This document shows, piece by piece, positions 34,903 to 50,095 of a stretch of DNA of 64,000 nt; within the stretch, counting starts at the first letter, position 1, and every line of letters starts with the position of its first letter. The notes under the pieces are model-generated. The model saw only the letters and a list, made by a program, of their open reading frames with translations, was not told the origin of the DNA and did not search any database. Made by a program: the position numbers and the translations under genes. The stretch is taken from the IMG/VR virus record IMGVR_UViG_3300047095_000752, positions 181,226 through 245,225 of that record; one strand, written 5' to 3'.

Positions 34903-35415
34903 ATGGAAGAAGAAATTTGGAAACCTATTCCAGAATATGAAGATTCATATGAAGTTAGCAATCTAGGTAGAATAAAAAGTATAAAATTCAATAAAGAAAA
35001 AATACTAAAACTATCATTCGATAATTATGGCTATAATCATTTGAGTTTACGTAAAAATAAAATAGGTAAAACCAAAAAAGTACATAGATTAGTTATGTTA
35101 ACTTTTAAAAATGATTCTTATTTTGATGGCGCTCAAGTTAATCACATTAATGGTATAAAGACTGATAATAGATTAGATAATCTAGAATGGTGCGATCAAT
35201 TCCATAATATGCAACACGCATTTAAATTAGGGCTACAAATATCACTCAAGGGTGAAAATCATGGTGCCGCTAAATTAAATCAAAATCAAGTTAATAAGAT
35301 TAGATTTTACTATGAAAATAAAATATTTAATCAACGTCAATTAGCAAATATGTTTAATATAAAACGAGGAACCATTTCCGATATCACCACTAAAAAAATT
35401 TGGTCTCATTGTTAA
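34903..35415 (+). CDS. NUMOD4-HNH homing endonuclease
   Basis: EEIWKPIPEYEDSYEVSNLGRIKS; VNHINGIKTDNRLDNLEW. Confidence 0.92.
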   Translation: MEEEIWKPIPEYEDSYEVSNLGRIKSIKFNKEKILKLSFDNYGYNHLSLRKNKIGKTKKVHRLVMLTFKNDSYFDGAQVNHINGIKTDNRLDNLEWCDQFHNMQHAFKLGLQISLKGENHGAAKLNQNQVNKIRFYYENKIFNQRQLANMFNIKRGTISDITTKKIWSHC

Positions 35416-35450
35416 ATAAATTTAGAAGTAACCGTTCGAAAGCGAGTTTT

Positions 35451-37751
35451 ATGAAACATTATATCATCGATACAAATATCCTTATTACAGACCCAAATGC
35501 AATTACGAATCTACTGGATGGAGGTACGAATAAAGTTACAGTTCCAATTAATGTATTGATGGAATTGGATAAACTTAAAAATGATATTAAAGTTGGTTAT
35601 TTAGCGCGAAAAGCCACAAATGAATTAATAAAACTCAGAGAACAAAATAAGGTAACTATACTTGGTTCTGAATCTAGTGATTGGATTGATAATTATTTAG
35701 CTTCACCTGATGGTAAGATTTTAGATAATATATTAAAAAGTAAACTTAATGTTAAAGACGACAATATATTTTTGACTAATGATAATATATTTTCAATGAC
35801 ATCCGAACAGATATTTGCTGCTAAGAAGAGAAAGATTAAAGTTGAACCTTATAATACAAAAGGTGAGTATATATCAGATCCAGTTTTATTCAATGGATTT
35901 TTAAAGAGTAGTAACGTTGAAGATAACTTTATTAACGTAGCTAATTATTTTACTTGGAATGAAGGTAAATTAAATTTTAACAATAAAAAGAAGTCTCGTG
36001 CGGTCGCGGAACAAAAGGTGTGGACTCTAAGCCCTCGCCACTATACCCAAAAAATGATGATTGATCTTATTCTTAATGACGATATCAAACTTTTAAGCGT
36101 GCAGGGGCAGGCCGGGTTTGGGAAAGCTCAACCATTAGATTCGAAAGTGTTGACACCTAATGGGTGGATCCGAATGGGTGATATAAAAATTGGAGATGTG
36201 GTATCAACTCCAGATAGCACCACAGCATCTGTCGTTGGGGTGTACCCGCAAGGTGAAATTGACATATATCAAGTGACGTTTAATGACGGAACAAAAACCG
36301 AATGTTGTGGCGATCATTTGTGGAAAGTTCGAACTTATTGTGAAAAACATAAATACAAAGTAAAAACAACAAATGAACTTAAAGATGACTTATACGTTAA
36401 AACTAAAGTCGAAGGTAAGGGACAACGAATAAAATATTTTAACTTCCCATTAGAATGTGCCTACATGGATGAAAAACCAATCCCAATACACCCCTATGTA
36501 ATTGGTGTACTGTTGGGTGACGGAACTCTTTATTCTAGCTATACAAAATTAACTTCAAATGATCCAGAAATAATAGAAGAATGTAGAAGACTTATAGGTA
36601 ATGATATTATACTTGAAAAAACAAATGACGAAAATAATATGGAATACACATTTATAAAAAAGATCCGAAGTTCATCTTTTGTAAAAAATAGTTTTAATGA
36701 AATACTAAAGTCTTTAGACTTAGCCGGTAAAAAATCATATGAAAAGTACATACCGAAAGATTATTTATTCAATTCAAAACAAAATAGAATAGAACTACTC
36801 CAAGGATTGATGGACACCGATGGATTTGTGTCAGACGGTAAAGTGACAAAAGAAATATCATATTGTAGTACATCTTATCAGTTGTGTTTGGGTGTTATGG
36901 ATTTAGTCCGTTCACTTGGTGGAAAAGCCACTATAAACCAAAAGAAAACATTTTGTTATACGAAAGGTTATGAGAAAGAGGGTAGACCCGCATGGAATGT
37001 AAATATAAATTTTTCAAACGATGTAATTCCATTTAAATTAAAGAGAAAGGTCGATAGGTTTTTGAGTTTAAAAAAATATCCCGTCTCTAAAGGTATAAAA
37101 AGTATTGAATATATAGGTAAAAAAGAGGCACAATGTATTTCAATAGATCACAAAGATCATTTATATATAACGGACGATTTTATTTCTACACACAACACTG
37201 TGATCGCCTTAGCCTGTGCTCTTTATGAAACATTTGAAAAACATAAGTATAAAAAGATCGTATTCGTTAAACCTATGTTTGAAATTGGTAATTCTATGGG
37301 ATTCCTTCCGGGGGACGTGAATGATAAAATAGGTTGCTATTTCGAGTATGCGTTAGATCTACTTCTATTCCTGAGTGATCAGCGCAAAGCAACTAAGATA
37401 TTTGATGATCCACAGAATTATAAAAAGATTAATGAAAAGGCATTCAAATTTATGCCACTAAACTTTATTCGCGGCCAAAATTTAAACGAGACACTTCTTA
37501 TATGCGATGAGTTTCAAAACGCTAACAAACACGAACTGAAGTCGATCCTTACACGATGCGGCGAAGGTACTAAAGCGATCATCCTTGGTGACGTAGATCA
37601 AATCGACAATGCAGCAGTGAACAAACAAAATAATGCGATCAGTGCTCTGGTTAGAAATATGCTCCCGAATGATAAGTATGCTCATATTGTACTTAGTGGT
37701 AAACAGTCACGCGGACCTGTCTGCGATATGATCCTTAACTCTGGAATTTAA
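35451..37751 (+). CDS. phoH: PIN-PhoH ATPase (PhoH2-type) containing an intein
   Basis: IIDTN PIN start; GQAGFGK|T Walker A split by intein; GFLPGD, IRG, DEFQN, TRCGE, GD..QID. Confidence 0.9.
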   Translation: MKHYIIDTNILITDPNAITNLLDGGTNKVTVPINVLMELDKLKNDIKVGYLARKATNELIKLREQNKVTILGSESSDWIDNYLASPDGKILDNILKSKLNVKDDNIFLTNDNIFSMTSEQIFAAKKRKIKVEPYNTKGEYISDPVLFNGFLKSSNVEDNFINVANYFTWNEGKLNFNNKKKSRAVAEQKVWTLSPRHYTQKMMIDLILNDDIKLLSVQGQAGFGKAQPLDSKVLTPNGWIRMGDIKIGDVVSTPDSTTASVVGVYPQGEIDIYQVTFNDGTKTECCGDHLWKVRTYCEKHKYKVKTTNELKDDLYVKTKVEGKGQRIKYFNFPLECAYMDEKPIPIHPYVIGVLLGDGTLYSSYTKLTSNDPEIIEECRRLIGNDIILEKTNDENNMEYTFIKKIRSSSFVKNSFNEILKSLDLAGKKSYEKYIPKDYLFNSKQNRIELLQGLMDTDGFVSDGKVTKEISYCSTSYQLCLGVMDLVRSLGGKATINQKKTFCYTKGYEKEGRPAWNVNINFSNDVIPFKLKRKVDRFLSLKKYPVSKGIKSIEYIGKKEAQCISIDHKDHLYITDDFISTHNTVIALACALYETFEKHKYKKIVFVKPMFEIGNSMGFLPGDVNDKIGCYFEYALDLLLFLSDQRKATKIFDDPQNYKKINEKAFKFMPLNFIRGQNLNETLLICDEFQNANKHELKSILTRCGEGTKAIILGDVDQIDNAAVNKQNNAISALVRNMLPNDKYAHIVLSGKQSRGPVCDMILNSGI
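36126..37196 (+). mobile_element. class 3 intein with LAGLIDADG endonuclease (357 aa)
   Basis: starts AQPLD (Ala1), ends THN before Thr+1; DHLW, AQCI, THN give the W-C-T triplet; LLGDG and LQGLMDTDG motifs. Confidence 0.9.
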
Positions 37752-39112: not shown

Positions 39113-39122
39113 AGGACATTTG

Positions 39123-41720
39123 ATGCCATCATTAACATTTACACCAACAAGTGCCGTAGTGTCGGGTTCTGTAACGGCTCCAAATTCATCATGGACTAAC
39201 TTGTCTTATTTATATGATTTATCCGGGAGCCACACCCAAACTTCAATCACACTAGCACCGAACGCTGAGACCAATTATCTAATTATTAGTGGATTTGGAT
39301 CCGAGATCCCTGCTGGTACGACATTAACCGGTGTTCGATTTAATTTTGATGTATCTCTCGATTCAGTATCGGATAGTGAAAACGTGGCGGCTACCGAACT
39401 CTACCTTCAGATCAATGGTTCGGATTACGGACCAAACTTGGTGGCAACTGAAGGTTATCTAAATGATTTCGGTTATGGTAATGGGTCAGTTGGTGGTGGA
39501 GTTGGGGATTATATTGTAGATGGACTTAATTTAACTTTGGTTGAAAATTCCACATTTGGTATAAAATTAAAAATTAGAAATACAAACACAATAGAATATT
39601 ACAGAGCCTATATAAACTCTGTGTCATTAGAATTATTCCACTCAGAAGAACGTCCGAAATTCTTATATGAAGGGGATTCTACATCAGAAGTTCATATACA
39701 ATTACCATTATCGGATACCACATCAACTACAGTATTTCAAATATTACATGGCGCGGAAGACACCACATCACCCGGTACAAACTATAACTACTTCTGGGGA
39801 TTTGGATTCTCCGCTCCTAACCCAAATGATCCAGCCGTTGGTTACACACCTATAACTCAGATTCCCGGACACGGTAGTTATGATACCAACTATTTAGTTC
39901 CGACCTATGGAACAAGTTTAGATTCAACTGAGTATTGTTGTTATAATATAACAGACCATACAATGGCGTATGACACAGCCGGTCTTGTTGTGGGTGAAAC
40001 TTATCGTAGATCCCTTGATTTGATAAATATTAGATTACCGATTATAACAATTTATGGTCAATTATACGATTCACTTTATTTTAACATCGAAATAATTCCA
40101 GAAGCAGATCAACTACCACACTTTATTTATAATGGCGACTCAACATCTGAAGTAACAGTTACATTAGATAAAAAAGTAGGAGCTACAAATCCAACTACAA
40201 ACTTTTTAATACACCACGGTCCAGATCCCGACATAATTACTCGTAATCCGGATTTAATATTATCTTATAAAACATATAGTATGTATACTGATGTAGATTC
40301 GACTTCACTGGAACCGGTATATGATTTTGATACTTCTTCAATTGGTTCTGGAATTGGTGTATATCCAAACAACTTCTTAAATACATCTCAGGTTAGTATT
40401 GTTAGAGGTGTAAGTGAATTATGGGGTTCAAGTACTGATACAACACACACAATGGCGTATAACGTATCAAGTTTAGTAGCGGGAAATACATATAGACGCG
40501 CACATGTTTTGTGGTATGAGGCAACGGATGCAAGTGGAGTCGTGTATGATTCTGGTATTTATGACACTCTGTATTTTAATGTAGATTTTGTTGATACCAC
40601 GGTTCCGCAATTAATTGAACCTTATATTATTTATAATGGGTTTACTAATTTAGATGCAAATATTGTAATTGACTTGAATCCAACTGCAACTATACCAACA
40701 ACTAACTTTGAAGTATATCATGGTGATATTGTAGAACCTTCAGATGGAGACGATTTAATATATTATCAGATAGGTGGATTTTATACTTCACCTTTAGGTA
40801 ATGATACAACATCCGTCTACACACCGTCTGATTACACAGGTAGTTATACAATTGGTACTTATAATGTCAATTACTTAGATTTAACCGGAGTAACATGGGA
40901 CCAAACTTCCGGGGTTTACCAAAGTCATACAACAACAAGTCATACTATGGGATATGACGTATCAGGTTTAATTGCAGGAGAAGTATATCGTCGAGGTGTT
41001 GCTCTAACTTATTATGATACCGATACAAGTGGTGATACTTCGTCTGGAGCTTTAAGAAAAAGTATTTATGATGTATTGTATTTTAACTTAAATGTAATCG
41101 ACACGAGTCCCGCTCCATTAGCATATCCATATTATGTGTACAGCGCAGATCCGTACCCAGACGGCGAACCCGTTGATCCTGATGGTCCCGACGGTCCTTT
41201 ACTTGAGCCAGATTATATTGGGGATTCGACATCTGAAATTAATATAAGCATGTATCCATACGATTCAACTACAATTACATTTGGTATTAAGCACGATATT
41301 GCTTCATTGCCTCCGGGTGTACATGATATGGTAGATATATTTTCTTATATTTACGATATTGGTAGAGACACAAGTGATGCTGTTATATCCCCAAGTTGGA
41401 CTTCACTTGATCCCACCCGAGAAGTTGAATCTGGTATTTACGATAATAGACCAAAAGATAATTATTTTGGTTCTGGCAATTTGGAATTAATTGAATTAAC
41501 AATATCACCATTTGTCTTGGGTGGGGAGTTATTAGAACCCGGAACTTATAGATTGTATTTATCATTAACTTTAATGGGTTATTCATATTCTATAGATCCC
41601 GAAGATTTAGTACCAGATGAAACAAATTCGTTTTACGAAATGGATAGATTGTATATTAACTTAACAATTCTTCCAAAAATATTTAGACACACAGGTACAT
41701 ATTCAAATTCAATTGTATAA
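39123..41720 (+). CDS. large acidic Thr/Ser/Tyr-rich protein with four ~160-aa repeats; probable virion surface protein
   Basis: repeats begin P.F.Y.GDSTSEV and end YD.LYFN. Confidence 0.65.
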   Translation: MPSLTFTPTSAVVSGSVTAPNSSWTNLSYLYDLSGSHTQTSITLAPNAETNYLIISGFGSEIPAGTTLTGVRFNFDVSLDSVSDSENVAATELYLQINGSDYGPNLVATEGYLNDFGYGNGSVGGGVGDYIVDGLNLTLVENSTFGIKLKIRNTNTIEYYRAYINSVSLELFHSEERPKFLYEGDSTSEVHIQLPLSDTTSTTVFQILHGAEDTTSPGTNYNYFWGFGFSAPNPNDPAVGYTPITQIPGHGSYDTNYLVPTYGTSLDSTEYCCYNITDHTMAYDTAGLVVGETYRRSLDLINIRLPIITIYGQLYDSLYFNIEIIPEADQLPHFIYNGDSTSEVTVTLDKKVGATNPTTNFLIHHGPDPDIITRNPDLILSYKTYSMYTDVDSTSLEPVYDFDTSSIGSGIGVYPNNFLNTSQVSIVRGVSELWGSSTDTTHTMAYNVSSLVAGNTYRRAHVLWYEATDASGVVYDSGIYDTLYFNVDFVDTTVPQLIEPYIIYNGFTNLDANIVIDLNPTATIPTTNFEVYHGDIVEPSDGDDLIYYQIGGFYTSPLGNDTTSVYTPSDYTGSYTIGTYNVNYLDLTGVTWDQTSGVYQSHTTTSHTMGYDVSGLIAGEVYRRGVALTYYDTDTSGDTSSGALRKSIYDVLYFNLNVIDTSPAPLAYPYYVYSADPYPDGEPVDPDGPDGPLLEPDYIGDSTSEINISMYPYDSTTITFGIKHDIASLPPGVHDMVDIFSYIYDIGRDTSDAVISPSWTSLDPTREVESGIYDNRPKDNYFGSGNLELIELTISPFVLGGELLEPGTYRLYLSLTLMGYSYSIDPEDLVPDETNSFYEMDRLYINLTILPKIFRHTGTYSNSIV

Positions 41721-41762
41721 TTAATAATGATATGGTACAATTGATGTAACGAGGATTCAATC

Positions 41763-41993
41763 ATGGCTTACACATTCGAACAAATTGTCAAAGGAACTAT
41801 AGGTATAATTTCAAGTTATATTCCGGGTAAACATAAAGTGGAGCCGGAAGTAGCAACGAGCCGCCTTAAGTTATGTTCGGATTGTGACCATATGAAAGAA
41901 AATCGTGGAAATTTTAAATGTGGTATTTGTGGATGTTATCTAAAATCTAAAGTTGTATTAAAAATAGAAAAGTGCCCTATAAATAAGTGGTGA
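41763..41993 (+). CDS. small Cys-rich protein (DUF6171-like)
   Basis: RLKLCSDC...CGICGCYL..K....EKCPINKW. Confidence 0.7.
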   Translation: MAYTFEQIVKGTIGIISSYIPGKHKVEPEVATSRLKLCSDCDHMKENRGNFKCGICGCYLKSKVVLKIEKCPINKW

Positions 41994-42037
41994 AAATTTT
42001 AGTTGACATCATAATTTAAATATGATATTATATTTTC

Positions 42038-42126
42038 GAAGTGAGCCGCGAGCCTAGTACTCATGGGACTTCGCCTCATAAACCCCGTTCCACTGTCTGC
42101 AGACCTTGTAACGGGGTTTATTTTTT
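42038..42126 (+). ncRNA. candidate ~90-nt small RNA or attenuator
   Basis: TTGACA-17-TATTAT promoter (42003-42031), GC-rich structured body, AAACCCCGTT/AACGGGGTTT terminator. Confidence 0.5.
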
Positions 42127-42146
42127 ATTATATATATTCAATATTG
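42127..42146 (+). promoter_or_regulatory. phage promoter class A
   Basis: ATTATATATAT TCAATAT TG directly after a terminator. Confidence 0.7.
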
Positions 42147-42185
42147 TATACGAAACCCTCAACCAGAACGGGAGTAAACAATATT

Positions 42186-42458
42186 ATGCCAACACCGAAT
42201 GAACAAGATCTGATCATATTTATGCATGAGTTCAACACCATTAACCATGAGATTATAAGCGCTATGGAACGGCGTACGTTTAGCATGGTTAAGATTACAG
42301 GTAACGGAGGAAACGTTACGGATCCCGCCACCCTAATCGTCGATGCTAAAAACATCGTCAAACAGACGGATCGCATCGGGGAATACAAACAAGAATTGGG
42401 AATCCTCAAAAATCGCTACGAGCGGTTCCTCACCGACAAAGGAATTGTAAATGCCTAG
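42186..42458 (+). CDS. hypothetical protein
   Basis: GGGAG RBS, ATG 42186. Confidence 0.6.
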   Translation: MPTPNEQDLIIFMHEFNTINHEIISAMERRTFSMVKITGNGGNVTDPATLIVDAKNIVKQTDRIGEYKQELGILKNRYERFLTDKGIVNA

Positions 42459-42648
42459 ACACTTGTCGCGGGAACAGCGAAAAGAAGTGGACCACATATT
42501 GGAACGGGTATACATTCTTAAATCGCTGACCGAGCAGGTGGATGAGTATACCCAACATATCAAGGAATTAAACCCGAGAAAGGTAGCCATAAGGGCTGAA
42601 CTCAAGGGTTTAATCAAATCATTACAAAACTTAGAATTCAACTTATAG
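42451..42648 (+). CDS. small coiled-coil protein
   Basis: coupled; terminator at 42645-42676. Confidence 0.55.
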   Translation: MPRHLSREQRKEVDHILERVYILKSLTEQVDEYTQHIKELNPRKVAIRAELKGLIKSLQNLEFNL

Positions 42649-42756
42649 GGGCTAACACCCCCTTTATTTTTTTTTGTTTAATTAATTTACGGTTGACAAA
42701 TTTATAGAATATATGGTAGTATTTATTATATATTTTAACTTGAAGGATACTAAATA

Positions 42757-43833
42757 ATGAGTAAAGAAAAGACTGAGAATAGCTATATGATCGCCGGATG
42801 CGATGTAGGTACCGGGAATCTTGTTTTTGCAAAAATAAATAAAGATAATAAAGTTGAAGTTAATTCAATTCGTGATATGTTTATTTACGTCGAAGATGAT
42901 CACATTTCTTCCTCGGAAATGGCTAGCTCAAAGCTGGACTATATCACCCAAAATGATGATAATGGCGATCCAGAATGGCACGCTGTAGTTGGGGACGATG
43001 CATTAAAACTTGCAAATATTTTTAATTCTAAGATTAATCGCCCAATGTCCAAGGGTATGCTTAGTCCACATGAAGTAAATGCGTCTCCTATTATTACAGC
43101 CATGCTTAAAAATATTATTGGAGAAGATGTTAATGGTGGACACGTTGTATTTAGTGTTCCTTCCCAGCCATGCGATACCGGTGAAGTTGCCCCATTGCAT
43201 TTCCACACGGAGGTATTTAAACAGATCTTTAAGAATATTGGATTTACCGAAGTTGTTCCGCTTAATGAAGCTCAGAGTGTGGTATTTTCAGAATGTGGAT
43301 CTGAGAATTTCACTGCATTGAGTGCCTCATGGGGCGCAGGGCAGGTTAATATAGCACTCACATTCAAAGGATCACTATTGTTTTCATTTAGTATTGGTCG
43401 TAGCGGTGATTGGATCGATGAGTATGCTGGATCTGCAACTGGATTGATCCCAAATAAAATTACATCGATTAAAGAAAAACCTGATATGAATATTAAAAAT
43501 CCAGTTACAGCGGCTACTCCCAAAAAGGAAAGAGTAGCGCGGCAAGCAATTGGATTCGCTTATCAACAACTGATTGCTTATGTTGTAGAACATATTGACG
43601 AGCAATTTAAAGCTCACGCTGATAATATTGATCTTGACGAACCAATTCCATTTGTACATGCAGGTGGTACTAGCCTTATTCCCGGATTTATTGATGCATT
43701 TACTGAGAAGTTTAATGAACTAAAAGAATTTCCAGTTGAGATCAGTGAAATTCGACAAGCTAAGGATCCCCTTAGCGCGATCAGTGTCGGATGTTTGACC
43801 TATTCACAATGGCTTCAAAATAAGAAGAGTTAA
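42757..43833 (+). CDS. actin-fold ATPase (MreB/FtsA/ParM superfamily)
   Basis: GCDVGTGN (phosphate 1), NEA (connect 1), SWGAGQVN (phosphate 2), AGGTSLIPGF (adenosine), DPLSAISVG (connect 2). Confidence 0.85.
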   Translation: MSKEKTENSYMIAGCDVGTGNLVFAKINKDNKVEVNSIRDMFIYVEDDHISSSEMASSKLDYITQNDDNGDPEWHAVVGDDALKLANIFNSKINRPMSKGMLSPHEVNASPIITAMLKNIIGEDVNGGHVVFSVPSQPCDTGEVAPLHFHTEVFKQIFKNIGFTEVVPLNEAQSVVFSECGSENFTALSASWGAGQVNIALTFKGSLLFSFSIGRSGDWIDEYAGSATGLIPNKITSIKEKPDMNIKNPVTAATPKKERVARQAIGFAYQQLIAYVVEHIDEQFKAHADNIDLDEPIPFVHAGGTSLIPGFIDAFTEKFNELKEFPVEISEIRQAKDPLSAISVGCLTYSQWLQNKKS

Positions 43834-43837
43834 TATT

Positions 43838-44782
43838 ATGCCCGCAAAATTAACTCATGACTTTGTGAACTCTTATTATAGAGATCATGGATATACATTA
43901 GATTCCACATATAATGGAAATAAGAATAAAGATGACCTGATATGCCAAGAGGGACATAAAACTAAAATATGTTTTGATAAATTTAAAAACCGTGGTGATC
44001 GATGTTCCGAATGTTCTGGTAACGAAAAATGGACATATGAAGAAGTATACAAAGCCTTCAAAGATAAAGGTTGTGAATTATTAGAAACAGAATATATTAA
44101 TAATCAAACAAAAATGAAATACAAATGTAAATGCGGGAATGGAAGTTCAATAACATTAGGTAATTTTAATTCAGGGCATAAATGCTCAAAATGTGGCGGC
44201 AACGAAAAATTAAAATATGAAACTGTCTACAAAGCCTTCAAAGATCAAGGTTGTGAATTGTTAGAAACAGAATATATTAATACACTTACTAAAATGAGAT
44301 ACAGGTGTGAATGTGGTAATGAATCCATCAGTTCGTATAATAATTTTCGGAGTGGTAATAGGTGTAAGGAATGTGGGTTATTAAAAAGGACTGGCGCGAA
44401 TCACCCAAGATTTAAAAAAGATAGAACTAGAATGGATCGAACTAAAATACTATCGTTTGATTATAGAAAACTCCACATCTTAAATGACGATCCCAATTAT
44501 GCAAATCACGTCCAATCCAAAAATGTCGCCAAGACATCGGGTAATAGATGGGATATATCTGATTATACCGTCGATCATATACAACCAAGAATTGCCTTTA
44601 TTGATAATGATCTTGACATTAAATACGATTTAAAAATAATTAAAGAAATCTGTAACCTACGAGAAAACTTAAGAATAATACCTCAAAAAGAAAATGGATC
44701 TAAAGCCGGTAAATACAACCAAGAAGAGTTCATGGCTTGGTTCAATGAAAAGATAAATGTATATAACTTAAAGGAAATATAA
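43838..44782 (+). CDS. Zn-ribbon-repeat HNH endonuclease
   Basis: three C.LLETEYIN...KM.Y.C.CG...G.(R/K)C..C repeats; VDHIQP...NL...N..K. Confidence 0.75.
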   Translation: MPAKLTHDFVNSYYRDHGYTLDSTYNGNKNKDDLICQEGHKTKICFDKFKNRGDRCSECSGNEKWTYEEVYKAFKDKGCELLETEYINNQTKMKYKCKCGNGSSITLGNFNSGHKCSKCGGNEKLKYETVYKAFKDQGCELLETEYINTLTKMRYRCECGNESISSYNNFRSGNRCKECGLLKRTGANHPRFKKDRTRMDRTKILSFDYRKLHILNDDPNYANHVQSKNVAKTSGNRWDISDYTVDHIQPRIAFIDNDLDIKYDLKIIKEICNLRENLRIIPQKENGSKAGKYNQEEFMAWFNEKINVYNLKEI

Positions 44783-47101
44783 ATGCAAATTGTAAAGACT
44801 ATGCAATTGACAAATCAGTGGGTTGTTGTGATAATCAACTCCATGCAGGATGTGGTTAATGAAATTGGTAGATTATCGGGTAGTTCAACATACCTGAATA
44901 ATGTTAATCTATGGGCAAGTACTAGATATACAGCGACACCAAACTACAATGCCCGTAACGCCTTCCGTACCGTCAGAGACCAATACATTGCCCAAGCCCG
45001 TATCAATGTAGGTGAACAAGCATTAGACGACGCCACATCATTCACACCAAATCCCCTAGAACAAGGCCGGGTACTCGTTGGAATCAATGAGGATATTACA
45101 ACTGGCGGCCCTCTTGTCGAATACGTACATTACTGTTACTTGAAGGTACCACTTGATACAACTTCAATCTCCGTATTCGGACAAACAACCTCCGTAATCC
45201 TGAATGATGACCAAATCTCCAGAGCAATCAAGATAAATCAGGTAGGCTATCTGCCCTCATCACCAAAGAAGTATGCCTATATAGGAGCGCACATTTATGA
45301 TCACGGTCCGCTTACCATCGATGCGACAAGTTTTACTATTCATGATAGTAGCTCAAACGCAACTGTGTATACCGGATCGGTCACACTAAGAGATTCAAAT
45401 ACAATTCTTGCAAGTGGAAAACCATTGACGGGTGAAAACGTCTATCAGATGGACCTCTCGGATTTTTCAGGTATTGGTGAATTTTACATTAAAGTTCCCG
45501 GCGTGGGAAGATCTTGGAATTTCAAACACACACTCGATGTTTATGGGGAAGTATTCTACACTACAACCCGTGGTCTTTATCATCAACGTTGTGGATTACC
45601 TCTAAAAGCTCCTTATACTAATTGGCTACGCCCAACCTGCCATACGAAACCAGTCAAGGAATCTAAATTCGTTTCGTTCCCAAGTCAATTTACAGATCGT
45701 CCCGCTAACTATGAACGGTTTGATGTTTACGGTGCGACCACAGATCATAGCTCATTCAACGTGACCGCAGCGGGCGGCTGGCATGACGCGGCAGACTGGG
45801 ATCGTAATACTCAGCACTACACTTGTGTTTTTGATCTTCTTTACGCTTATGAAATGGATCCTGATAAATTCACTTCAAATCAATTAAATATCCCGGAATC
45901 ACCAACCGCTTACCCAGATATATTGAAAGAGGCGGAATACGGTTTACAGTGTTGGAAGAGATCTATGGACTCGCGGGGCGGAGTTTCCGGGATGATCGAG
46001 ACGAATACGCATCCGACACGCGGAGTTGACGGCAATTACGCATACTCGGTTAGAACTCGCTGGGATTCACTACTATTAGCCGCCGCAGCAGCCATGATGG
46101 CGGAATTAATCGCGCCATTTGACATGGCTAAATCGAATACTTGGAAATGGTATGCTATTAAAAGTTATAACTTCGGAAACAATCCCGCTAATAGCTTAGG
46201 AACTGTGACAATCCCCGCGAAGACGAACCGAGGACTTGGTACATCTTACACCTATACCTTCACGGAAAAAGACACGCATATTGAACCGCTCCTTGCTCAC
46301 GCTAAATCCAGATTGTATAAGTTAACAAGCGATTCCACCTATCTAACTGGACTTGATACTTTAATTGGAAAATTAAGAGCACCATTTAAATGGCCATATA
46401 CAAATCGTGATTACAGCGGATGGATTAACTATAGTTGTCTCGATCACGTGTCAAATCCAACTACCAAAGCTAATTATATTAAACTTTGGTTTACAAATTA
46501 TGCTGATGCGTTACTACCCCACGTTGCAGCCCAGCCTTATAGATGTACTTGGCCAGTTACAAAAGACTTCTGGTTGGATTGGGGAGCGAGTTGCATGACC
46601 AATGAGAACAGATCCCTGCTACTTTCATACAAACTCACGACTCAATCCAAGTATTTAGAAGCTGCAATTTTAAACATGGACTATATGCTCGGCGCAAATC
46701 CACAGGGTATGGTATACACAACTGGTTTAGGGCAGTCGTATCCTGCAATTTTACAGCACGAAACGAGTCAGTTTGATGGCATCGATGATCCAGTACCCGG
46801 AATTGCCTTGTACGGTCAAACCGGCGGCTCACACAACACACTACGCACAACAGTCTGGCAATCCCCTTCTCCGACGGGACAGGTGGAATTCAAGACGCCC
46901 GTTGTTCCTTTATGGAGATCTTGGTCCGCTCACCCAACCTTAAATACAAGACAGTGTGAATTTACGATCCAAGAAACAATGTCCTGCAATATCTTCTCGG
47001 CTGCAGCCTTAATGTCGGAGGGGTGGAGTCCTTCAAATACACTTAAAACCAAGACTCCAAAGACACTGGCGAATTTACCCGGATATTATTACTTACCGTA
47101 A
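44783..47101 (+). CDS. glycoside hydrolase family 9 with Ig-like CelD_N domain
   Basis: INQVGYLP, LYHQRCG, GGWHDAAD, DYMLGANPQGMVYTTGLG, CEFTI catalytic Glu. Confidence 0.88.
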   Translation: MQIVKTMQLTNQWVVVIINSMQDVVNEIGRLSGSSTYLNNVNLWASTRYTATPNYNARNAFRTVRDQYIAQARINVGEQALDDATSFTPNPLEQGRVLVGINEDITTGGPLVEYVHYCYLKVPLDTTSISVFGQTTSVILNDDQISRAIKINQVGYLPSSPKKYAYIGAHIYDHGPLTIDATSFTIHDSSSNATVYTGSVTLRDSNTILASGKPLTGENVYQMDLSDFSGIGEFYIKVPGVGRSWNFKHTLDVYGEVFYTTTRGLYHQRCGLPLKAPYTNWLRPTCHTKPVKESKFVSFPSQFTDRPANYERFDVYGATTDHSSFNVTAAGGWHDAADWDRNTQHYTCVFDLLYAYEMDPDKFTSNQLNIPESPTAYPDILKEAEYGLQCWKRSMDSRGGVSGMIETNTHPTRGVDGNYAYSVRTRWDSLLLAAAAAMMAELIAPFDMAKSNTWKWYAIKSYNFGNNPANSLGTVTIPAKTNRGLGTSYTYTFTEKDTHIEPLLAHAKSRLYKLTSDSTYLTGLDTLIGKLRAPFKWPYTNRDYSGWINYSCLDHVSNPTTKANYIKLWFTNYADALLPHVAAQPYRCTWPVTKDFWLDWGASCMTNENRSLLLSYKLTTQSKYLEAAILNMDYMLGANPQGMVYTTGLGQSYPAILQHETSQFDGIDDPVPGIALYGQTGGSHNTLRTTVWQSPSPTGQVEFKTPVVPLWRSWSAHPTLNTRQCEFTIQETMSCNIFSAAALMSEGWSPSNTLKTKTPKTLANLPGYYYLP

Positions 47102-48871: not shown

Positions 48872-50095
48872 ATGGCTTCAAAGCTTAAAAAACAAAAAGT
48901 TGTAGACCTCACTGAAGATAACTCGGATTCGTTTCAAAATGCGTTTTCGAGTTTTCTATCCTCTACCCAAGGAATTGAAAATAAACTAACTGATGATATT
49001 AAGAAAATTCCAACTGGTATTGATTTTCTAGATGCCATTACGGGCGGTGGTATTCCTTGTAAGTTCTCAGTATTCGTGGGTAAGCCCGGCGGCGGTAAAA
49101 GCTCACTCCTTGCCAGTATTATTAAAGCCGGTCAGAAGAAATGGGGTAAGAAGTTTATTGCGGTATATGCAGACTCAGAAGAGTCCATGTCTCAGCAACG
49201 CCTAAAGGATTTGGGTTGTATATACCCAGTAAGTATTATTAATGGACTCACCGTAGAAAAGCTATTCAAATGTGTAGAGTCGGTATGTGCTTTTAAAGAA
49301 TCCAATCCCGAAAGTCTAGAGATCCCATCCATCATTGTTTGGGATTCAATTGCAAATACTCAAACTGAAGATTTAATGAATTCCGAAGAGTTATCGAATA
49401 CAGATGGCATGCGCCGCGCAAATATTCTATCCAAATATATACCAAAGTATGTCGACCGCCTAGCCAAGTACAACATCGCACTTGCCGCCGTAAATCAGTA
49501 CAGAGACAAGCCAAACGTCGGCGGTGGACCACAGGCTGCTGATATGCGAAACATGGGACAAGACGTTACAACCCCCGGCGGACACGCAGTCCAATATAAT
49601 GCATACTTAATGTTAGATATCGCTCAGGGTCCTATGCATAAAAATGATCCTTATGGGTACCCAATGGCACCAGTTACAATAAAAGCGATAAAAAACAAAT
49701 CATTCACATCAAACGTACCTATAGTATTAAATTTTAATCACACCAAAGGATTTTCTAACTTCTGGACGAATTATGAATTTCTAAAGACCCGCAAGTATAT
49801 TAAAGCTGGTGCCCGATGCTCATTAAATTCATATCCAACAGTAACATTTTTTCAAAAGAATGTCGCAAATCTCTATAATACAAATCCAGAATTTAAGGAA
49901 GCATTTAACGCTGACCTTAAATCTGCATTTGAAGAATTTATTAAAGAACACTCCGCCGAAAATATGGATAAAGATTCTTGGGATCCTAGTTCAGACATTA
50001 GCAATTCAACCGAACCTGTGATACAATATGATAGTCCTGATATGCACCCCGAAACCTTAGAAGAAGAGTCTGTGGAGTTATTCGATGTTGACTAA
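48872..50095 (+). CDS. RecA/UvsX-like recombinase
   Basis: IPTGIDFLDAITGGGIP, GKPGGGKS, DSE, IVWDSIA, VNQYRD, TPGG.A, IKNK. Confidence 0.9.
   Translation: MASKLKKQKVVDLTEDNSDSFQNAFSSFLSSTQGIENKLTDDIKKIPTGIDFLDAITGGGIPCKFSVFVGKPGGGKSSLLASIIKAGQKKWGKKFIAVYADSEESMSQQRLKDLGCIYPVSIINGLTVEKLFKCVESVCAFKESNPESLEIPSIIVWDSIANTQTEDLMNSEELSNTDGMRRANILSKYIPKYVDRLAKYNIALAAVNQYRDKPNVGGGPQAADMRNMGQDVTTPGGHAVQYNAYLMLDIAQGPMHKNDPYGYPMAPVTIKAIKNKSFTSNVPIVLNFNHTKGFSNFWTNYEFLKTRKYIKAGARCSLNSYPTVTFFQKNVANLYNTNPEFKEAFNADLKSAFEEFIKEHSAENMDKDSWDPSSDISNSTEPVIQYDSPDMHPETLEEESVELFDVD

What the first reader, a model, noticed from the sequence alone, without database searches (positions are those of the whole stretch)
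42757..43833. Phage-encoded actin-fold ATPase
Seen: all five actin-superfamily motifs, with the phosphate-2 Asp replaced (SWGAG), and a sigma70-like promoter (TTGACA at about 42693). No ParR-like partner or centromere repeat is evident nearby. Established: some jumbo phages use the tubulin PhuZ to position DNA and capsids. Inference: an actin-based equivalent, or an inhibitor of host MreB/FtsA.
Basis: partly seen in the sequence, partly recalled or inferred. Interest (0 to 1): 0.6.

Follow-up and report, generated by a model that had tools for sequence, protein, structure and literature searches.

The report
Actin homologue encoded by huge phages
A roughly 245-kb lake-water phage encodes a complete actin-fold protein of the recently named Volactin family; it belongs to a large, almost purely viral and experimentally unstudied branch found in hundreds of big phages that lack the tubulin PhuZ, so it probably builds the phage's own filaments inside the infected cell.

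Summary

The window is the end of a 245-kb IMG/VR tailed-phage record from lake water. The "missing" phosphate-2 Asp is real but not peculiar to this gene. Ser191, with Asn198, is present in 364 of 368 relatives, while the founding H. volcanii volactin keeps Asp. All other nucleotide-site residues are invariant.

At least 569 IMG/VR contigs encode relatives, no cultured phage does, and no paper describes them. On a tree, viral copies separate from the Planctomycetota/Omnitrophota copies.

This phage and 23 other large carriers have no tubulin, whereas phiKZ's PhuZ is found by the same search. In the window's sub-clade the gene always lies just upstream of a UvsX-type recombinase. Cellular relatives are repeatedly fused to ParB-HTH or HU DNA-binding domains.

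Best reading: a polymerising, probably slow-turnover actin that organises phage DNA or replication. This is inferred, not shown. No ParR/parC-type partner was found. I rate it a new variant of a known kind, interest about 0.6.

The parts
42647..42674 (+). Terminator-like hairpin plus T-run. It ends the upstream transcription unit (the 65-aa coiled-coil ORF 42451-42648).
   Evidence: 5-bp GC-rich stem, loop, then a T-run. Consensus match only.
42693..42722 (+). Sigma-70-like promoter candidate: TTGACA, 18-nt spacer, TAGTAT, with TG before the -10.
   Evidence: 10 of 12 matches. Not enriched over shuffles. Plausible from its position only.
42742..42747 (+). Ribosome-binding site GAAGGA, 9 nt upstream of the ATG.
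   Evidence: Read directly from the sequence.
42757..43833 (+). Volactin-family actin homologue, 358 aa (P0001).
42787..42828 (+). Phosphate-1 motif (residues 11-24). D16, G18 and T19 are invariant in the family.
43249..43293 (+). Connect-1 region (residues 165-179). N170 is nearly invariant. E171 is the catalytic-Glu position and is invariant but for a few relatives; it aligns to MamK E143.
43312..43359 (+). Phosphate-2 motif (residues 186-201) of the variant form S191-x-G193-x-G195-x-x-N198. S191 (nt 43327-43329) takes the place of the canonical Asp.
   Evidence: H. volcanii volactin has Asp at this position.
43402..43419 (+). S-G-D-W-I-D motif (residues 216-221). G217 and D218 are invariant and D221 nearly so; the motif corresponds to the G-x-x-x-D-E stretch of MamK.
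   Evidence: It is also an intein insertion site in a relative.
43642..43686 (+). Adenosine motif (residues 296-310). It contains G303-G304-T305-S, the same GGTS as in H. volcanii volactin.
43765..43830 (+). Connect-2 helix (G345), followed by a clade-specific aromatic-basic C-terminal tail (Y-S-Q-W-L-Q-N-K-K-S).
43838..44782 (+). Context, not part of the system as far as shown: HNH/CapR-domain endonuclease-like gene (314 aa) at position +1. It has homologues at +1 in two relatives and paralogues elsewhere.
48872..50095 (+). Context: UvsX/RecA-type recombinase. It is the gene most persistently linked to the actin gene in this sub-clade (0.4-6.7 kb downstream, same strand, in 8 of 8 contexts).

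Best explanation
The gene encodes a nucleotide-binding, filament-forming actin homologue of the Volactin family. It belongs to a virus-specific branch of a "Ser-type" sub-family, in which phosphate-2 reads S-x-G-x-G-x-x-N instead of D-x-G-x-G-T-x-D/E.

Proposed mechanism:
1. The gene is expressed from its own promoter during infection.
2. The protein binds ATP or GTP through its fully conserved phosphate-1, connect-1, adenosine and G-D-W-I-D residues.
3. It polymerises into cytoplasmic filaments.
4. Both acidic residues of phosphate-2 are neutralised, so hydrolysis-driven turnover is probably slow or partner-gated. The filaments would then act more as a stable track or scaffold than as a dynamically unstable spindle.
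5. The most likely cargo is replicating or recombining phage DNA (the replication factory), held through an adaptor that has not been identified.

Shown here: phage origin, family membership, fold, motif conservation, distribution, absence of tubulin, genomic linkage, and DNA-binding fusions in cellular kin.

Inferred: polymerisation, slow turnover, and the cargo.
For: Family and fold:
- PF25216 at 178 bits, full length.
- AF2 pLDDT 92.5.
- The best structural matches are all filament-forming actins and cover residues 8-358.
- The founding volactin forms dynamic filaments in vivo (PMC10869688).

Active site under selection:
- D16, G18, T19, H150, G193, G195, G217, D218, K239, E240, G303 and G304 are invariant across the 368 aligned relatives, apart from a few sequences in the most distant set. 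E171 varies in 3 of them and D221 in 5.
- Inteins sit at four or more different sites inside or abutting the phosphate-2 and G-D-W-I-D motifs in relatives. This is the classic preference of inteins for indispensable catalytic motifs.

Slow turnover:
- S191 aligns to MamK D161.
- MamK D161A loses ATPase-driven dynamics but still forms stabilised filaments (PMC5059902).
- ParM D170A and AlfA D168A likewise give static filaments (PMC5539076).

Self-association hints:
- A natural tandem fusion of two Volactin domains exists (P0115).
- Paired paralogues occur in cellular genomes.

DNA link:
- Cellular members of the same Ser-type sub-family are fused to ParB-HTH (4 of 13 N-terminal extensions, best E 2.3e-7).
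- Others are fused to HU (P0176, 37.7 bits; Atlas cluster of 69 members with 96% HU).
- In all 8 contexts of the window's sub-clade the gene lies 0.4-6.7 kb upstream of UvsX in a replication/recombination module. This holds at only 40-78% protein identity and with the intervening genes turning over.

Niche:
- G000 and 23 other carrier phages of 200-530 kb have no tubulin. phiKZ's PhuZ is found by the same search, and phiKZ has no Volactin.
- Precedent for a phage actin serving phage DNA replication: AlpC/AlpA of prophage CGP3 (PMC4446434).
Against: - No experiment exists on any Ser-type member, and no solved structure has the Ser-type site. BeeR, MamK and MreB all keep Asp.
- Polymerisation was not supported computationally. 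The homodimer job gave no verdict, which is not evidence either way.
- No adaptor or centromere was found.
- The immediate upstream ORFs are not conserved even in close relatives.
- Linkage to UvsX could simply be inherited synteny within one phage lineage.
- In the other, larger viral clade the gene sits in a different conserved block of DUF2460-like, Zn-ribbon, ferritin/Dps-like and coiled-coil genes. That block points as much to virion or other functions as to DNA.
- The DNA-binding fusions are in cellular relatives, not in phage ones.
- Expression is not shown. The one RNA contig lies in the upstream ORF only.
Confidence: 0.45

Rival explanations
1. The protein forms filaments, but they move or organise capsids or virion parts (assembly-site organisation, capsid delivery) rather than DNA.
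For: In the largest viral clade the gene is embedded in a conserved block. The block holds two DUF2460-like proteins (about 397 and about 1430 aa; DUF2460 is a phage-tail-associated family to my knowledge), a Zn-ribbon protein, a ferritin/Dps-like protein and coiled-coil proteins. In the window, an 866-aa repeat protein and a GH9 hydrolase lie nearby. PhuZ filaments are reported to deliver capsids (reviews cited).
Against: The DUF2460 hits are below the Pfam cut-off. That block is absent from the window's clade. In the window's clade the persistent neighbour is UvsX. Cellular kin are fused to DNA-binding domains, not structural ones.
Confidence: 0.15
2. The protein targets the host: it co-polymerises with or caps a host actin homologue (MreB, FtsA or a host Volactin-like protein), or otherwise remodels host shape or division to favour the phage.
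For: Cellular members of the same sub-family exist in Planctomycetota and Omnitrophota, so some hosts may have a cognate polymer. A natural hydrolysis-impaired site resembles the dominant-negative MamK D161A.
Against: Viral copies form their own deep clade, apart from the cellular ones (96% SH-aLRT support). They do not look like recent host copies. The Ser-type site is shared with the cellular proteins, so it is not a phage "poison" adaptation. The MreB model does not recognise the protein. The host is unknown: the phage is 34.8% GC and from lake water.
Confidence: 0.12
3. It is a ParM-like partition motor that segregates the phage genome as a plasmid-like, pseudolysogenic or carrier-state replicon.
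For: An actin-fold NTPase on a mobile element is the classic type II partition layout. Cellular kin fused to ParB-HTH or HU suggest segregation-type roles. Some carrier records are flagged as provirus by IMG/VR.
Against: There are no centromere-like repeats within 1 kb on either side. No ParR/RHH/HTH neighbour was found. The 245 kb held has no ParB, ParA or integrase. There is no ParM-family hit. The gene sits in a lytic-type replication/recombination module.
Confidence: 0.1
4. It is a non-polymerising ASKHA-fold enzyme or chaperone (an Hsp70-NBD-like or EutJ-like ATPase, or a kinase) that merely shares the fold.
For: The fold superfamily includes many non-filament ATPases. EutJ and viral Hsp70s appear among the structural matches. 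The altered phosphate-2 could signal a different chemistry.
Against: The protein is the minimal four-subdomain actin with no substrate-binding or lid domain. The best sequence-profile and structural matches are MamK, BeeR, MreB and actin, not Hsp70 or kinases. The family's founding member forms filaments. Tandem and paired paralogues also occur.
Confidence: 0.08

Closest known systems
Volactin (VolA, HVO_2015) of Haloferax volcanii; Pfam PF25216
   Same: Same Pfam family, well above the gathering score and over its full length. Same four-subdomain actin fold. Same D-x-G phosphate-1 logic and the same G-G-T-S adenosine motif. VolA forms dynamic, cytoplasm-spanning filaments.
   Different: VolA keeps the canonical phosphate-2 Asp (V-D-F-G-A-G-T). 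This protein and 364 of 368 relatives have Ser191 and Asn198. VolA is a chromosomal archaeal cell-shape factor, whereas this is a bacteriophage gene in a replication/recombination module. The two sequences were not aligned directly here, because only the three motif stretches of VolA printed in the paper were at hand.
MamK (magnetosome actin; PDB 5ljv, 5jyg)
   Different: MamK has D161 and D168 where this family has S191 and N198. MamK D161A is ATPase-dead with stabilised filaments. The cargo and the partners (MamJ, MamY) are unrelated.
BeeR (Verrucomicrobiota actin; PDB 8r2n)
   Different: BeeR keeps the phosphate-2 Asp and forms a three-stranded tube. It is not in the Volactin Pfam family as far as tested, and it is not viral.
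MreB
   Different: The MreB/Mbl model does not match this protein. Phosphate-2 differs, and no elongasome context is present.
AlpC/AlpA of Corynebacterium prophage CGP3
   Same: The one characterised phage-encoded actin. It is an early gene that forms filaments and is needed for efficient phage DNA replication. It is the closest functional precedent for the explanation proposed here.
   Different: AlpC works with a co-transcribed DNA-binding adaptor (AlpA) and alpS sites, and nothing equivalent was found here. CGP3 is a temperate prophage of an actinobacterium, not a huge lytic-type phage. Sequence kinship was not tested.
PhuZ (tubulin of nucleus-forming jumbo phages)
   Same: It is a phage-encoded cytoskeletal NTPase of jumbo phages that positions the replication compartment, so it is a functional analogue. 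The two appear in different phages. 24 of 24 Volactin carriers lack tubulin, and phiKZ has PhuZ but no Volactin.
   Different: It has a tubulin fold and is a GTPase, so it is an unrelated protein. Whether Volactin-carrying phages build a phage nucleus was not tested.
ParM / type II (ParMRC) plasmid partition
   Same: An actin-fold NTPase on a mobile genetic element, Z in the same range, and ParM among the Foldseek matches.
   Different: No ParM-family HMM hit, no ParR, and no parC-like repeats.
Bacillus phage G Gp506
   Same: The best match among predicted viral structures (E 2.2e-12). It is another jumbo-phage actin-fold protein.
   Different: It is not detectably related by sequence: tblastn of the phage collection found only two uncultured huge phages. 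Its function is unknown.

Membership tests
Volactin family (Pfam PF25216) | Match to the family HMM above the curated gathering score, over the whole domain. | tested here: met
   178.2 bits against a cut-off of 35, E 3.7e-52, residues 11-347 on profile positions 1-318 of 321. Confirmed on the genome.
Volactin family (Pfam PF25216) | Complete actin (ASKHA) fold with four subdomains. | tested here: met
Volactin family (Pfam PF25216) | Phosphate-1 (D/E-x-G) and adenosine (G-G) nucleotide motifs, as listed for VolA by Schiller et al. | tested here: met
   D16-V-G-T and G303-G304-T-S, invariant in the family.
Volactin family (Pfam PF25216) | Phosphate-2 motif with the conserved Asp (D-x-G), as in VolA. 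| tested here: not met
   S191-W-G-A-G, with Ser in 364 of 368 relatives. VolA has V-D-F-G-A-G-T. This defines a distinct Ser-type sub-family inside the Pfam family.
Volactin family (Pfam PF25216) | Dynamic filaments in vivo, and a role in the rod-to-disk shape transition. | not testable with these tools
   This needs microscopy and genetics. The homo-oligomer prediction gave no verdict.
MreB/Mbl (PF06723) | Match to the MreB/Mbl HMM. | tested here: not met
   No hit at E<=1 in hmmscan and none at E<=0.01 on the genome. Resemblance is at the fold level only.
ParMRC type II partition system | ParM-family ATPase. | tested here: not met
   The Pfam scan at E<=1 returns only Volactin.
ParMRC type II partition system | Adjacent small DNA-binding adaptor (ParR). 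| tested here: inconclusive
   No RHH/HTH/ParB domain was found in neighbouring ORFs or anywhere in the 245 kb held. Uncharacterised small ORFs do lie upstream (76, 131 and 65 aa). Only the 76-aa DUF6171 Zn-ribbon protein is conserved in relatives.
ParMRC type II partition system | Centromere-like array of direct repeats next to the operon. | tested here: not met
   No repeat array in 41700-44900. The only sizeable repeat lies inside the HNH/CapR gene.
AlpAC-type phage actin system | Co-transcribed adaptor that binds phage DNA and the actin; sequence kinship to AlpC. | not tested
The comparison is functional only.
PhuZ/TubZ phage tubulins | Tubulin/FtsZ GTPase fold. | tested here: not met
   The fold is actin. 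There is no PF00091 match in the phage. The positive control, phiKZ, matched at E 2.6e-8.

The most novel reading that the evidence does not exclude
Many huge phages that lack PhuZ run an actin-based cytoskeleton of their own. It would be a deep, virus-specific clade of "Ser-type" Volactins whose neutralised phosphate-2 site gives slow-turnover filaments that position phage DNA or replication factories. Their cellular sisters in Planctomycetota, Omnitrophota and Acidobacteriota occur as a plain copy paired with a copy fused to a ParB-HTH or HU domain. Those pairs would form a previously unrecognised actin-driven DNA-organising or segregating machine.
Probability: 0.3. Interest if true: 0.85.

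Novelty: new variant of a known kind. Interest (0 to 1): 0.62.

Why it matters
Phage cell biology currently knows one widespread phage cytoskeleton, the tubulin PhuZ of nucleus-forming jumbo phages, and one studied phage actin, AlpC of a Corynebacterium prophage. A 2026 review of jumbo-phage biology does not mention actin homologues at all. None of the 17 papers that mention volactin concerns phages, judging by their titles.

This family is present on at least 569 IMG/VR contigs, many of them 200-530 kb. It forms a virus-specific clade, and the tubulin-free phages examined all carry it. If it polymerises, it is a second, independent and probably much more widespread way for large phages to organise the infected cell.

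The family-wide replacement of the phosphate-2 Asp is also of interest. That is the residue whose mutation freezes MamK, ParM and AlfA filaments. The replacement is therefore a natural experiment on how actin-fold polymers couple hydrolysis to dynamics.

The DNA-binding fusions in PVC-group and Acidobacteriota relatives suggest an unstudied cellular system as well.

Tried and rejected
- Homo-oligomer prediction (two copies, alignment A1) gave no verdict, with scores 0.00 and 0.00. It counts neither for nor against binding.
- PHROGs gave no meaningful hit.
- phmmer of the single sequence against PDB found nothing real.
- Megablast of 8 kb against deposited phages found no match.
- The single-protein scan of IMG/VR found only one close relative. 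The alignment-based scan was needed.
A smaller alignment worked.
- Expression: one freshwater metatranscriptome held a 232-nt contig at 42201-42432, in the upstream ORF, and nothing on the actin gene. Nothing can be concluded.
- Promoter significance: the match is not above chance.
- Partner search: the ORFs immediately upstream (131 and 65 aa) have no homologue next to the actin gene in any fetched locus and no Pfam domain above threshold. The conserved neighbourhood of the large viral clade is absent from the window.
- The Gp23 capsid HMM search was uninformative, because nothing matched anywhere.
- Literature searches for phage actins of this kind returned only AlpC and unrelated papers.
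- I considered and rejected the idea that the Ser at phosphate-2 marks a decayed or pseudo-enzyme copy. It is invariant across hundreds of sequences, together with all other active-site residues.
- I considered and rejected the idea that the MAG copies are all misbinned phage. The Omnitrophota and Planctomycetota contexts are cellular. One "Altiarchaeales" contig, however, does look like phage.
Full report
**1. The observation**

It sits in a 108-nt intergenic gap. The gap holds a terminator-like hairpin (42647-42664 plus a T-run). It also holds a TTGACA / 18 nt / TAGTAT site with an extended-minus-10 TG (42693-42722) and a GAAGGA ribosome site 9 nt before the ATG.

The promoter is a good consensus match in the right place, but statistically it is no more than chance. 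There are 16 promoter-like sites in 3.5 kb against 16.3 in shuffles. The strict pattern occurs three times in 64 kb against 1.46 expected.

All five actin-superfamily motifs are present and fall on the expected strands and helices of the predicted fold. Phosphate-2 does read S-W-G-A-G. No repeat array or recognisable DNA-binding neighbour lies nearby.

**2. The genome**

The window is the last 64 kb of a 245,225-bp IMG/VR virus record. The record is linear and about 78% complete by CheckV. It is 34.8% GC and carries six tRNA genes.

It is a tailed phage. It has a portal and a UvsX-like recombinase, a terminase large subunit, RNR and a DnaB-type helicase, and a PIN-PhoH protein.

Near-identical DNA occurs in many lake-water metagenomes. 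Eight runs hold at least half of the sampled words, and contigs from three further samples match the gene without a difference.

The 245 kb held contains no tubulin, ParA-type ATPase, tyrosine integrase, ParB or MreB-type gene.

**3. Identity of the protein**

Pfam gives a single, full-length hit: Volactin (PF25216), 178.2 bits against a gathering score of 35. AlphaFold2 with a 40-sequence alignment gives pLDDT 92.5 and pTM 0.90.

A family profile reaches MamK (E 9e-8), BeeR (1.7e-6) and MreB (4e-5) by sequence. The ESM Atlas places the protein among clusters automatically named "Volactin domain-containing protein", which are 70-100% viral (Uroviricota).

Volactin was named in 2024 for HVO_2015 of Haloferax volcanii. 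It forms dynamic filaments that span the cytoplasm and is needed for the timely rod-to-disk transition (PMC10869688).

**4. The phosphate-2 site**

The profile alignment puts Ser191 on MamK Asp161 and Asn198 on MamK Asp168. Across the 368 relatives I aligned, position 191 is Ser in 364:

| Group | Ser at position 191 |
|---|---|
| IMG/VR loci | 80 of 80 |
| Planctomycetota / other bacterial MAG copies | 17 of 17 |
| Omnitrophota copies | 2 of 2 |
| Metagenome proteins | 110 of 111 |
| Cluster representatives | 147 of 150 |

Position 198 is Asn in nearly all of them. By contrast, the founding H. volcanii volactin has V-D-F-G-A-G-T (Supplementary Fig. 8b of PMC10869688). BeeR, MamK and MreB also keep the Asp.

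There is a "Ser-type" branch of the Volactin family in which both acidic residues of phosphate-2 are neutralised.

This is not decay. Nearly every other nucleotide-site residue is invariant in all groups, with a handful of exceptions in the most distant set. These residues are D16, G18, T19, E171, G193, G195, G217, D218, D221, G303 and G304. The same holds for the family-specific R39, R95, H150 and K239-E240.

Independent support comes from inteins. Several 700-800-aa relatives carry inteins with LAGLIDADG or HNH endonuclease domains. The inteins are inserted at four or more different points:
- directly after the Ser;
- after S-F-G-A-G-M;
- after M-V-N-V;
- directly before G-D-W-V-D.

Inteins characteristically home into indispensable catalytic motifs (established knowledge).

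What the substitution does can only be inferred. MamK D161A abolishes ATPase-driven dynamics, slows FRAP recovery about ten-fold and yields stabilised filaments (PMC5059902). ParM D170A and AlfA D168A also give static filaments (PMC5539076). A natural Ser/Asn site therefore suggests polymerisation with slow or partner-gated turnover. An invariant hydroxyl could still coordinate the metal or a water molecule, so hydrolysis may be retained.

**5. Distribution and phylogeny**

- The exhaustive representative search finds 767 clusters at E<=1e-3, of which 216 are at E<=1e-30.
- The 5.8-billion-protein search finds 111 hits, all PF25216 and all unnamed or "hypothetical".
Of the 80 best, 23 lie on contigs of 200-529 kb.
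- Among deposited phage genomes, only two unannotated uncultured huge phages (485 and 595 kb) match. No cultured phage does.
- In species-representative genomes the family appears mainly in Planctomycetota MAGs, plus Omnitrophota. Those contexts are cellular, with HEAT-repeat proteins, a hybrid histidine kinase, and TPR and esterase genes.
- A 123-row maximum-likelihood tree (quick search, LG+G4, midpoint root for drawing only) has a branch with 96% SH-aLRT support. It separates 21 Planctomycetota/Omnitrophota and unlabelled rows from 102 rows that are almost all viral.
- The window's protein sits in an 8-row clade (100%) within a 20-row (98%) and a 33-row (99%) viral clade.
- Of the two MAG rows inside the viral set, at least one is probably a misbinned phage contig. 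This is the "Altiarchaeales" row, whose neighbours are the phage-clade genes.

I make no claim about the direction of transfer, because the tree is unrooted and lacks the Asp-type archaeal members.

**6. Genomic context and partners**

In close relatives (78% and 65% identity) the order of genes is conserved. It runs PIN-PhoH, a large repeat protein, the DUF6171 Zn-ribbon protein, the actin gene, a CapR/HNH-like gene, GH9, three small genes, UvsX, AAA_28 and DnaB.

Across all eight contexts of the 20-row sub-clade, a UvsX-type recombinase lies 0.4-6.7 kb downstream on the same strand. The eight contexts are the window, L105, L106, L003, L004, L005, L031 and L108. This holds at 40-78% protein identity, while the genes in between turn over. 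This places the gene in the replication/recombination module, but it may be inherited synteny.

The ORFs immediately upstream (131 and 65 aa; the latter is a coiled coil) are not conserved.

In the larger viral clade the gene lies in a different conserved block. That block holds a protein of about 170 aa, a coiled-coil protein and a ferritin/Dps-like protein upstream of the actin gene. Downstream it holds a DUF2460-like protein, a Zn-ribbon protein and a DUF2460-like protein of about 1430 aa.

No universal partner emerges.

**7. Hints from fusions in relatives**

Members of the same Ser-type sub-family occur as:
- a natural tandem of two Volactin domains (P0115);
- N-terminal ParB-type HTH fusions (4 of 13 extensions, best E 2.3e-7);
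- N-terminal HU-type fusions (P0176, Bac_DNA_binding 37.7 bits; an Atlas cluster of 69 Acidobacteriota proteins, 96% with HU);
- one fusion to a Wzz/GNVR/ParA-type module (P0169).

The ParB-HTH fusions sit in cellular contigs. They always sit directly after a plain 336-338-aa paralogue. Omnitrophota show the same two-gene layout (347 aa plus 465 aa).

Two independent fusions to DNA-binding domains are Rosetta-stone-type evidence that polymers of this sub-family are coupled to DNA. The tandem and paired copies hint at self- or co-assembly. Both are inferences, and both come from cellular relatives.

**8. Relation to PhuZ**

The phage itself has no tubulin-family match at E<=0.01. Neither do 23 other carrier records of 200-529 kb at E<=0.001, eight of which are at least 90% complete. 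The same search finds phiKZ's PhuZ at E 2.6e-8, and phiKZ has no Volactin.

In this sample the actin-type and tubulin-type genes are carried by different huge phages. Chimallin was not tested.

**9. Verdict**

It is a member of the known Volactin Pfam family. It belongs to a virus-specific clade of a Ser-type sub-family that no paper in the searchable library describes and that no structure or experiment covers.

The most likely mechanism (confidence about 0.45) is a nucleotide-dependent, probably slow-turnover filament that organises phage DNA or replication. AlpC/AlpA is the functional precedent and PhuZ the analogue.

The rivals and my confidence in each:
- capsid or virion trafficking, 0.15;
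- interference with a host cytoskeleton, 0.12;
- ParM-like partition of a carrier state, 0.10;
- a non-polymerising ASKHA enzyme, 0.08.

Polymerisation, turnover, cargo and expression remain untested here. The homo-oligomer prediction returned no verdict, and the metatranscriptome contig does not cover the gene.

Novelty: a new variant of a known kind. Interest: about 0.6.

Noticed in passing
window 35400-37751 (+): The PIN-PhoH gene is 783 aa here against 409-412 aa in the close relatives L105 and L106. It matches them in two separate segments and carries LAGLIDADG/homing-endonuclease domains in between. This is an intein (or intein-like insertion) in the phage PhoH ATPase.
   Followed up: partly
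relatives P0118, P0120, P0121, P0122, P0133 (and other 680-800-aa hits): Inteins with LAGLIDADG or HNH domains are inserted at four or more different sites of the Volactin fold. All lie inside or next to the S-x-G-x-G-x-x-N and G-D-W-I-D motifs.
   Followed up: yes
L109 2206-5196; L110 6860-10676; L089 5989-8553: Cellular genomes carry a two-gene cassette. A plain Volactin-like gene (336-347 aa) is followed directly by a paralogue with an N-terminal extension, which in several cases is a ParB-type HTH. A separate Acidobacteriota cluster has HU fused instead (P0176). This may be an unstudied actin-based DNA-organising system.
   Followed up: partly
L006-L082 (for example L010 5862-15092): In the largest viral clade the actin gene sits in a conserved same-strand block. 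Upstream are a protein of about 170 aa, a coiled-coil protein and a ferritin/Dps-like protein. Downstream are a DUF2460-like protein (about 397 aa), a Zn-ribbon protein (about 144 aa) and a DUF2460-like giant (about 1430 aa). The block is absent from the window.
   Followed up: partly
window 43838-44782 (+): The +1 gene is an HNH/CapR-domain endonuclease-like protein with an internal 140-nt duplication (44002-44141 and 44182-44321). It has homologues at +1 in relatives and paralogues after PhoH. Metagenome contigs break, and show loose ends and joints, mostly inside it, as expected of a multi-copy mobile gene.
   Followed up: partly
window 44783-47101 (+): This is a 772-aa GH9 glycoside hydrolase with a CelD_N Ig-like domain, encoded by a phage. 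It is conserved at 69-75% identity in relatives and duplicated in tandem in L003. It may be a depolymerase. The substrate and any clue to the host were not pursued.
   Followed up: no
window 43774-43830 (C-terminus of the protein): The window's 20-row sub-clade has a conserved aromatic-basic tail after connect-2 (Y-[AS]-x-W, then two or three residues, then K/R-K/R). The other viral clades and most cellular copies lack it. It could contact membrane, DNA or a partner.
   Followed up: no
L085 (contig WJJK01000382.1, labelled Candidatus Altiarchaeales MAG): Its Volactin-like gene nests inside the viral clade and is flanked by the phage-clade neighbour families. The contig is probably a misbinned phage fragment rather than archaeal DNA.
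   Followed up: partly
window 39120-41720 (+): This 866-aa protein has no Pfam or PHROG hit and is built of about three internal repeats (multiple offset BLAST segments against its homologues). Its length varies between relatives (828-1060 aa).
   Followed up: no
window 42201-42432: The only piece of a freshwater metatranscriptome run that lies on the 4.5-kb stretch is a 232-nt contig inside the upstream 131-aa ORF. DNA carry-over cannot be excluded.
   Followed up: no
relative P0169 (1160 aa): A Volactin domain is fused to a Wzz / GNVR / ParA-type (bacterial tyrosine-kinase-like) polysaccharide co-polymerase module.
   Followed up: no
G000:C1:13572-16862 (outside the window): A cluster of six tRNA genes: Ile-TAT twice, Leu-TAA, Asn-GTT, Arg-TCT, and one with an irregular anticodon loop.
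   Followed up: no
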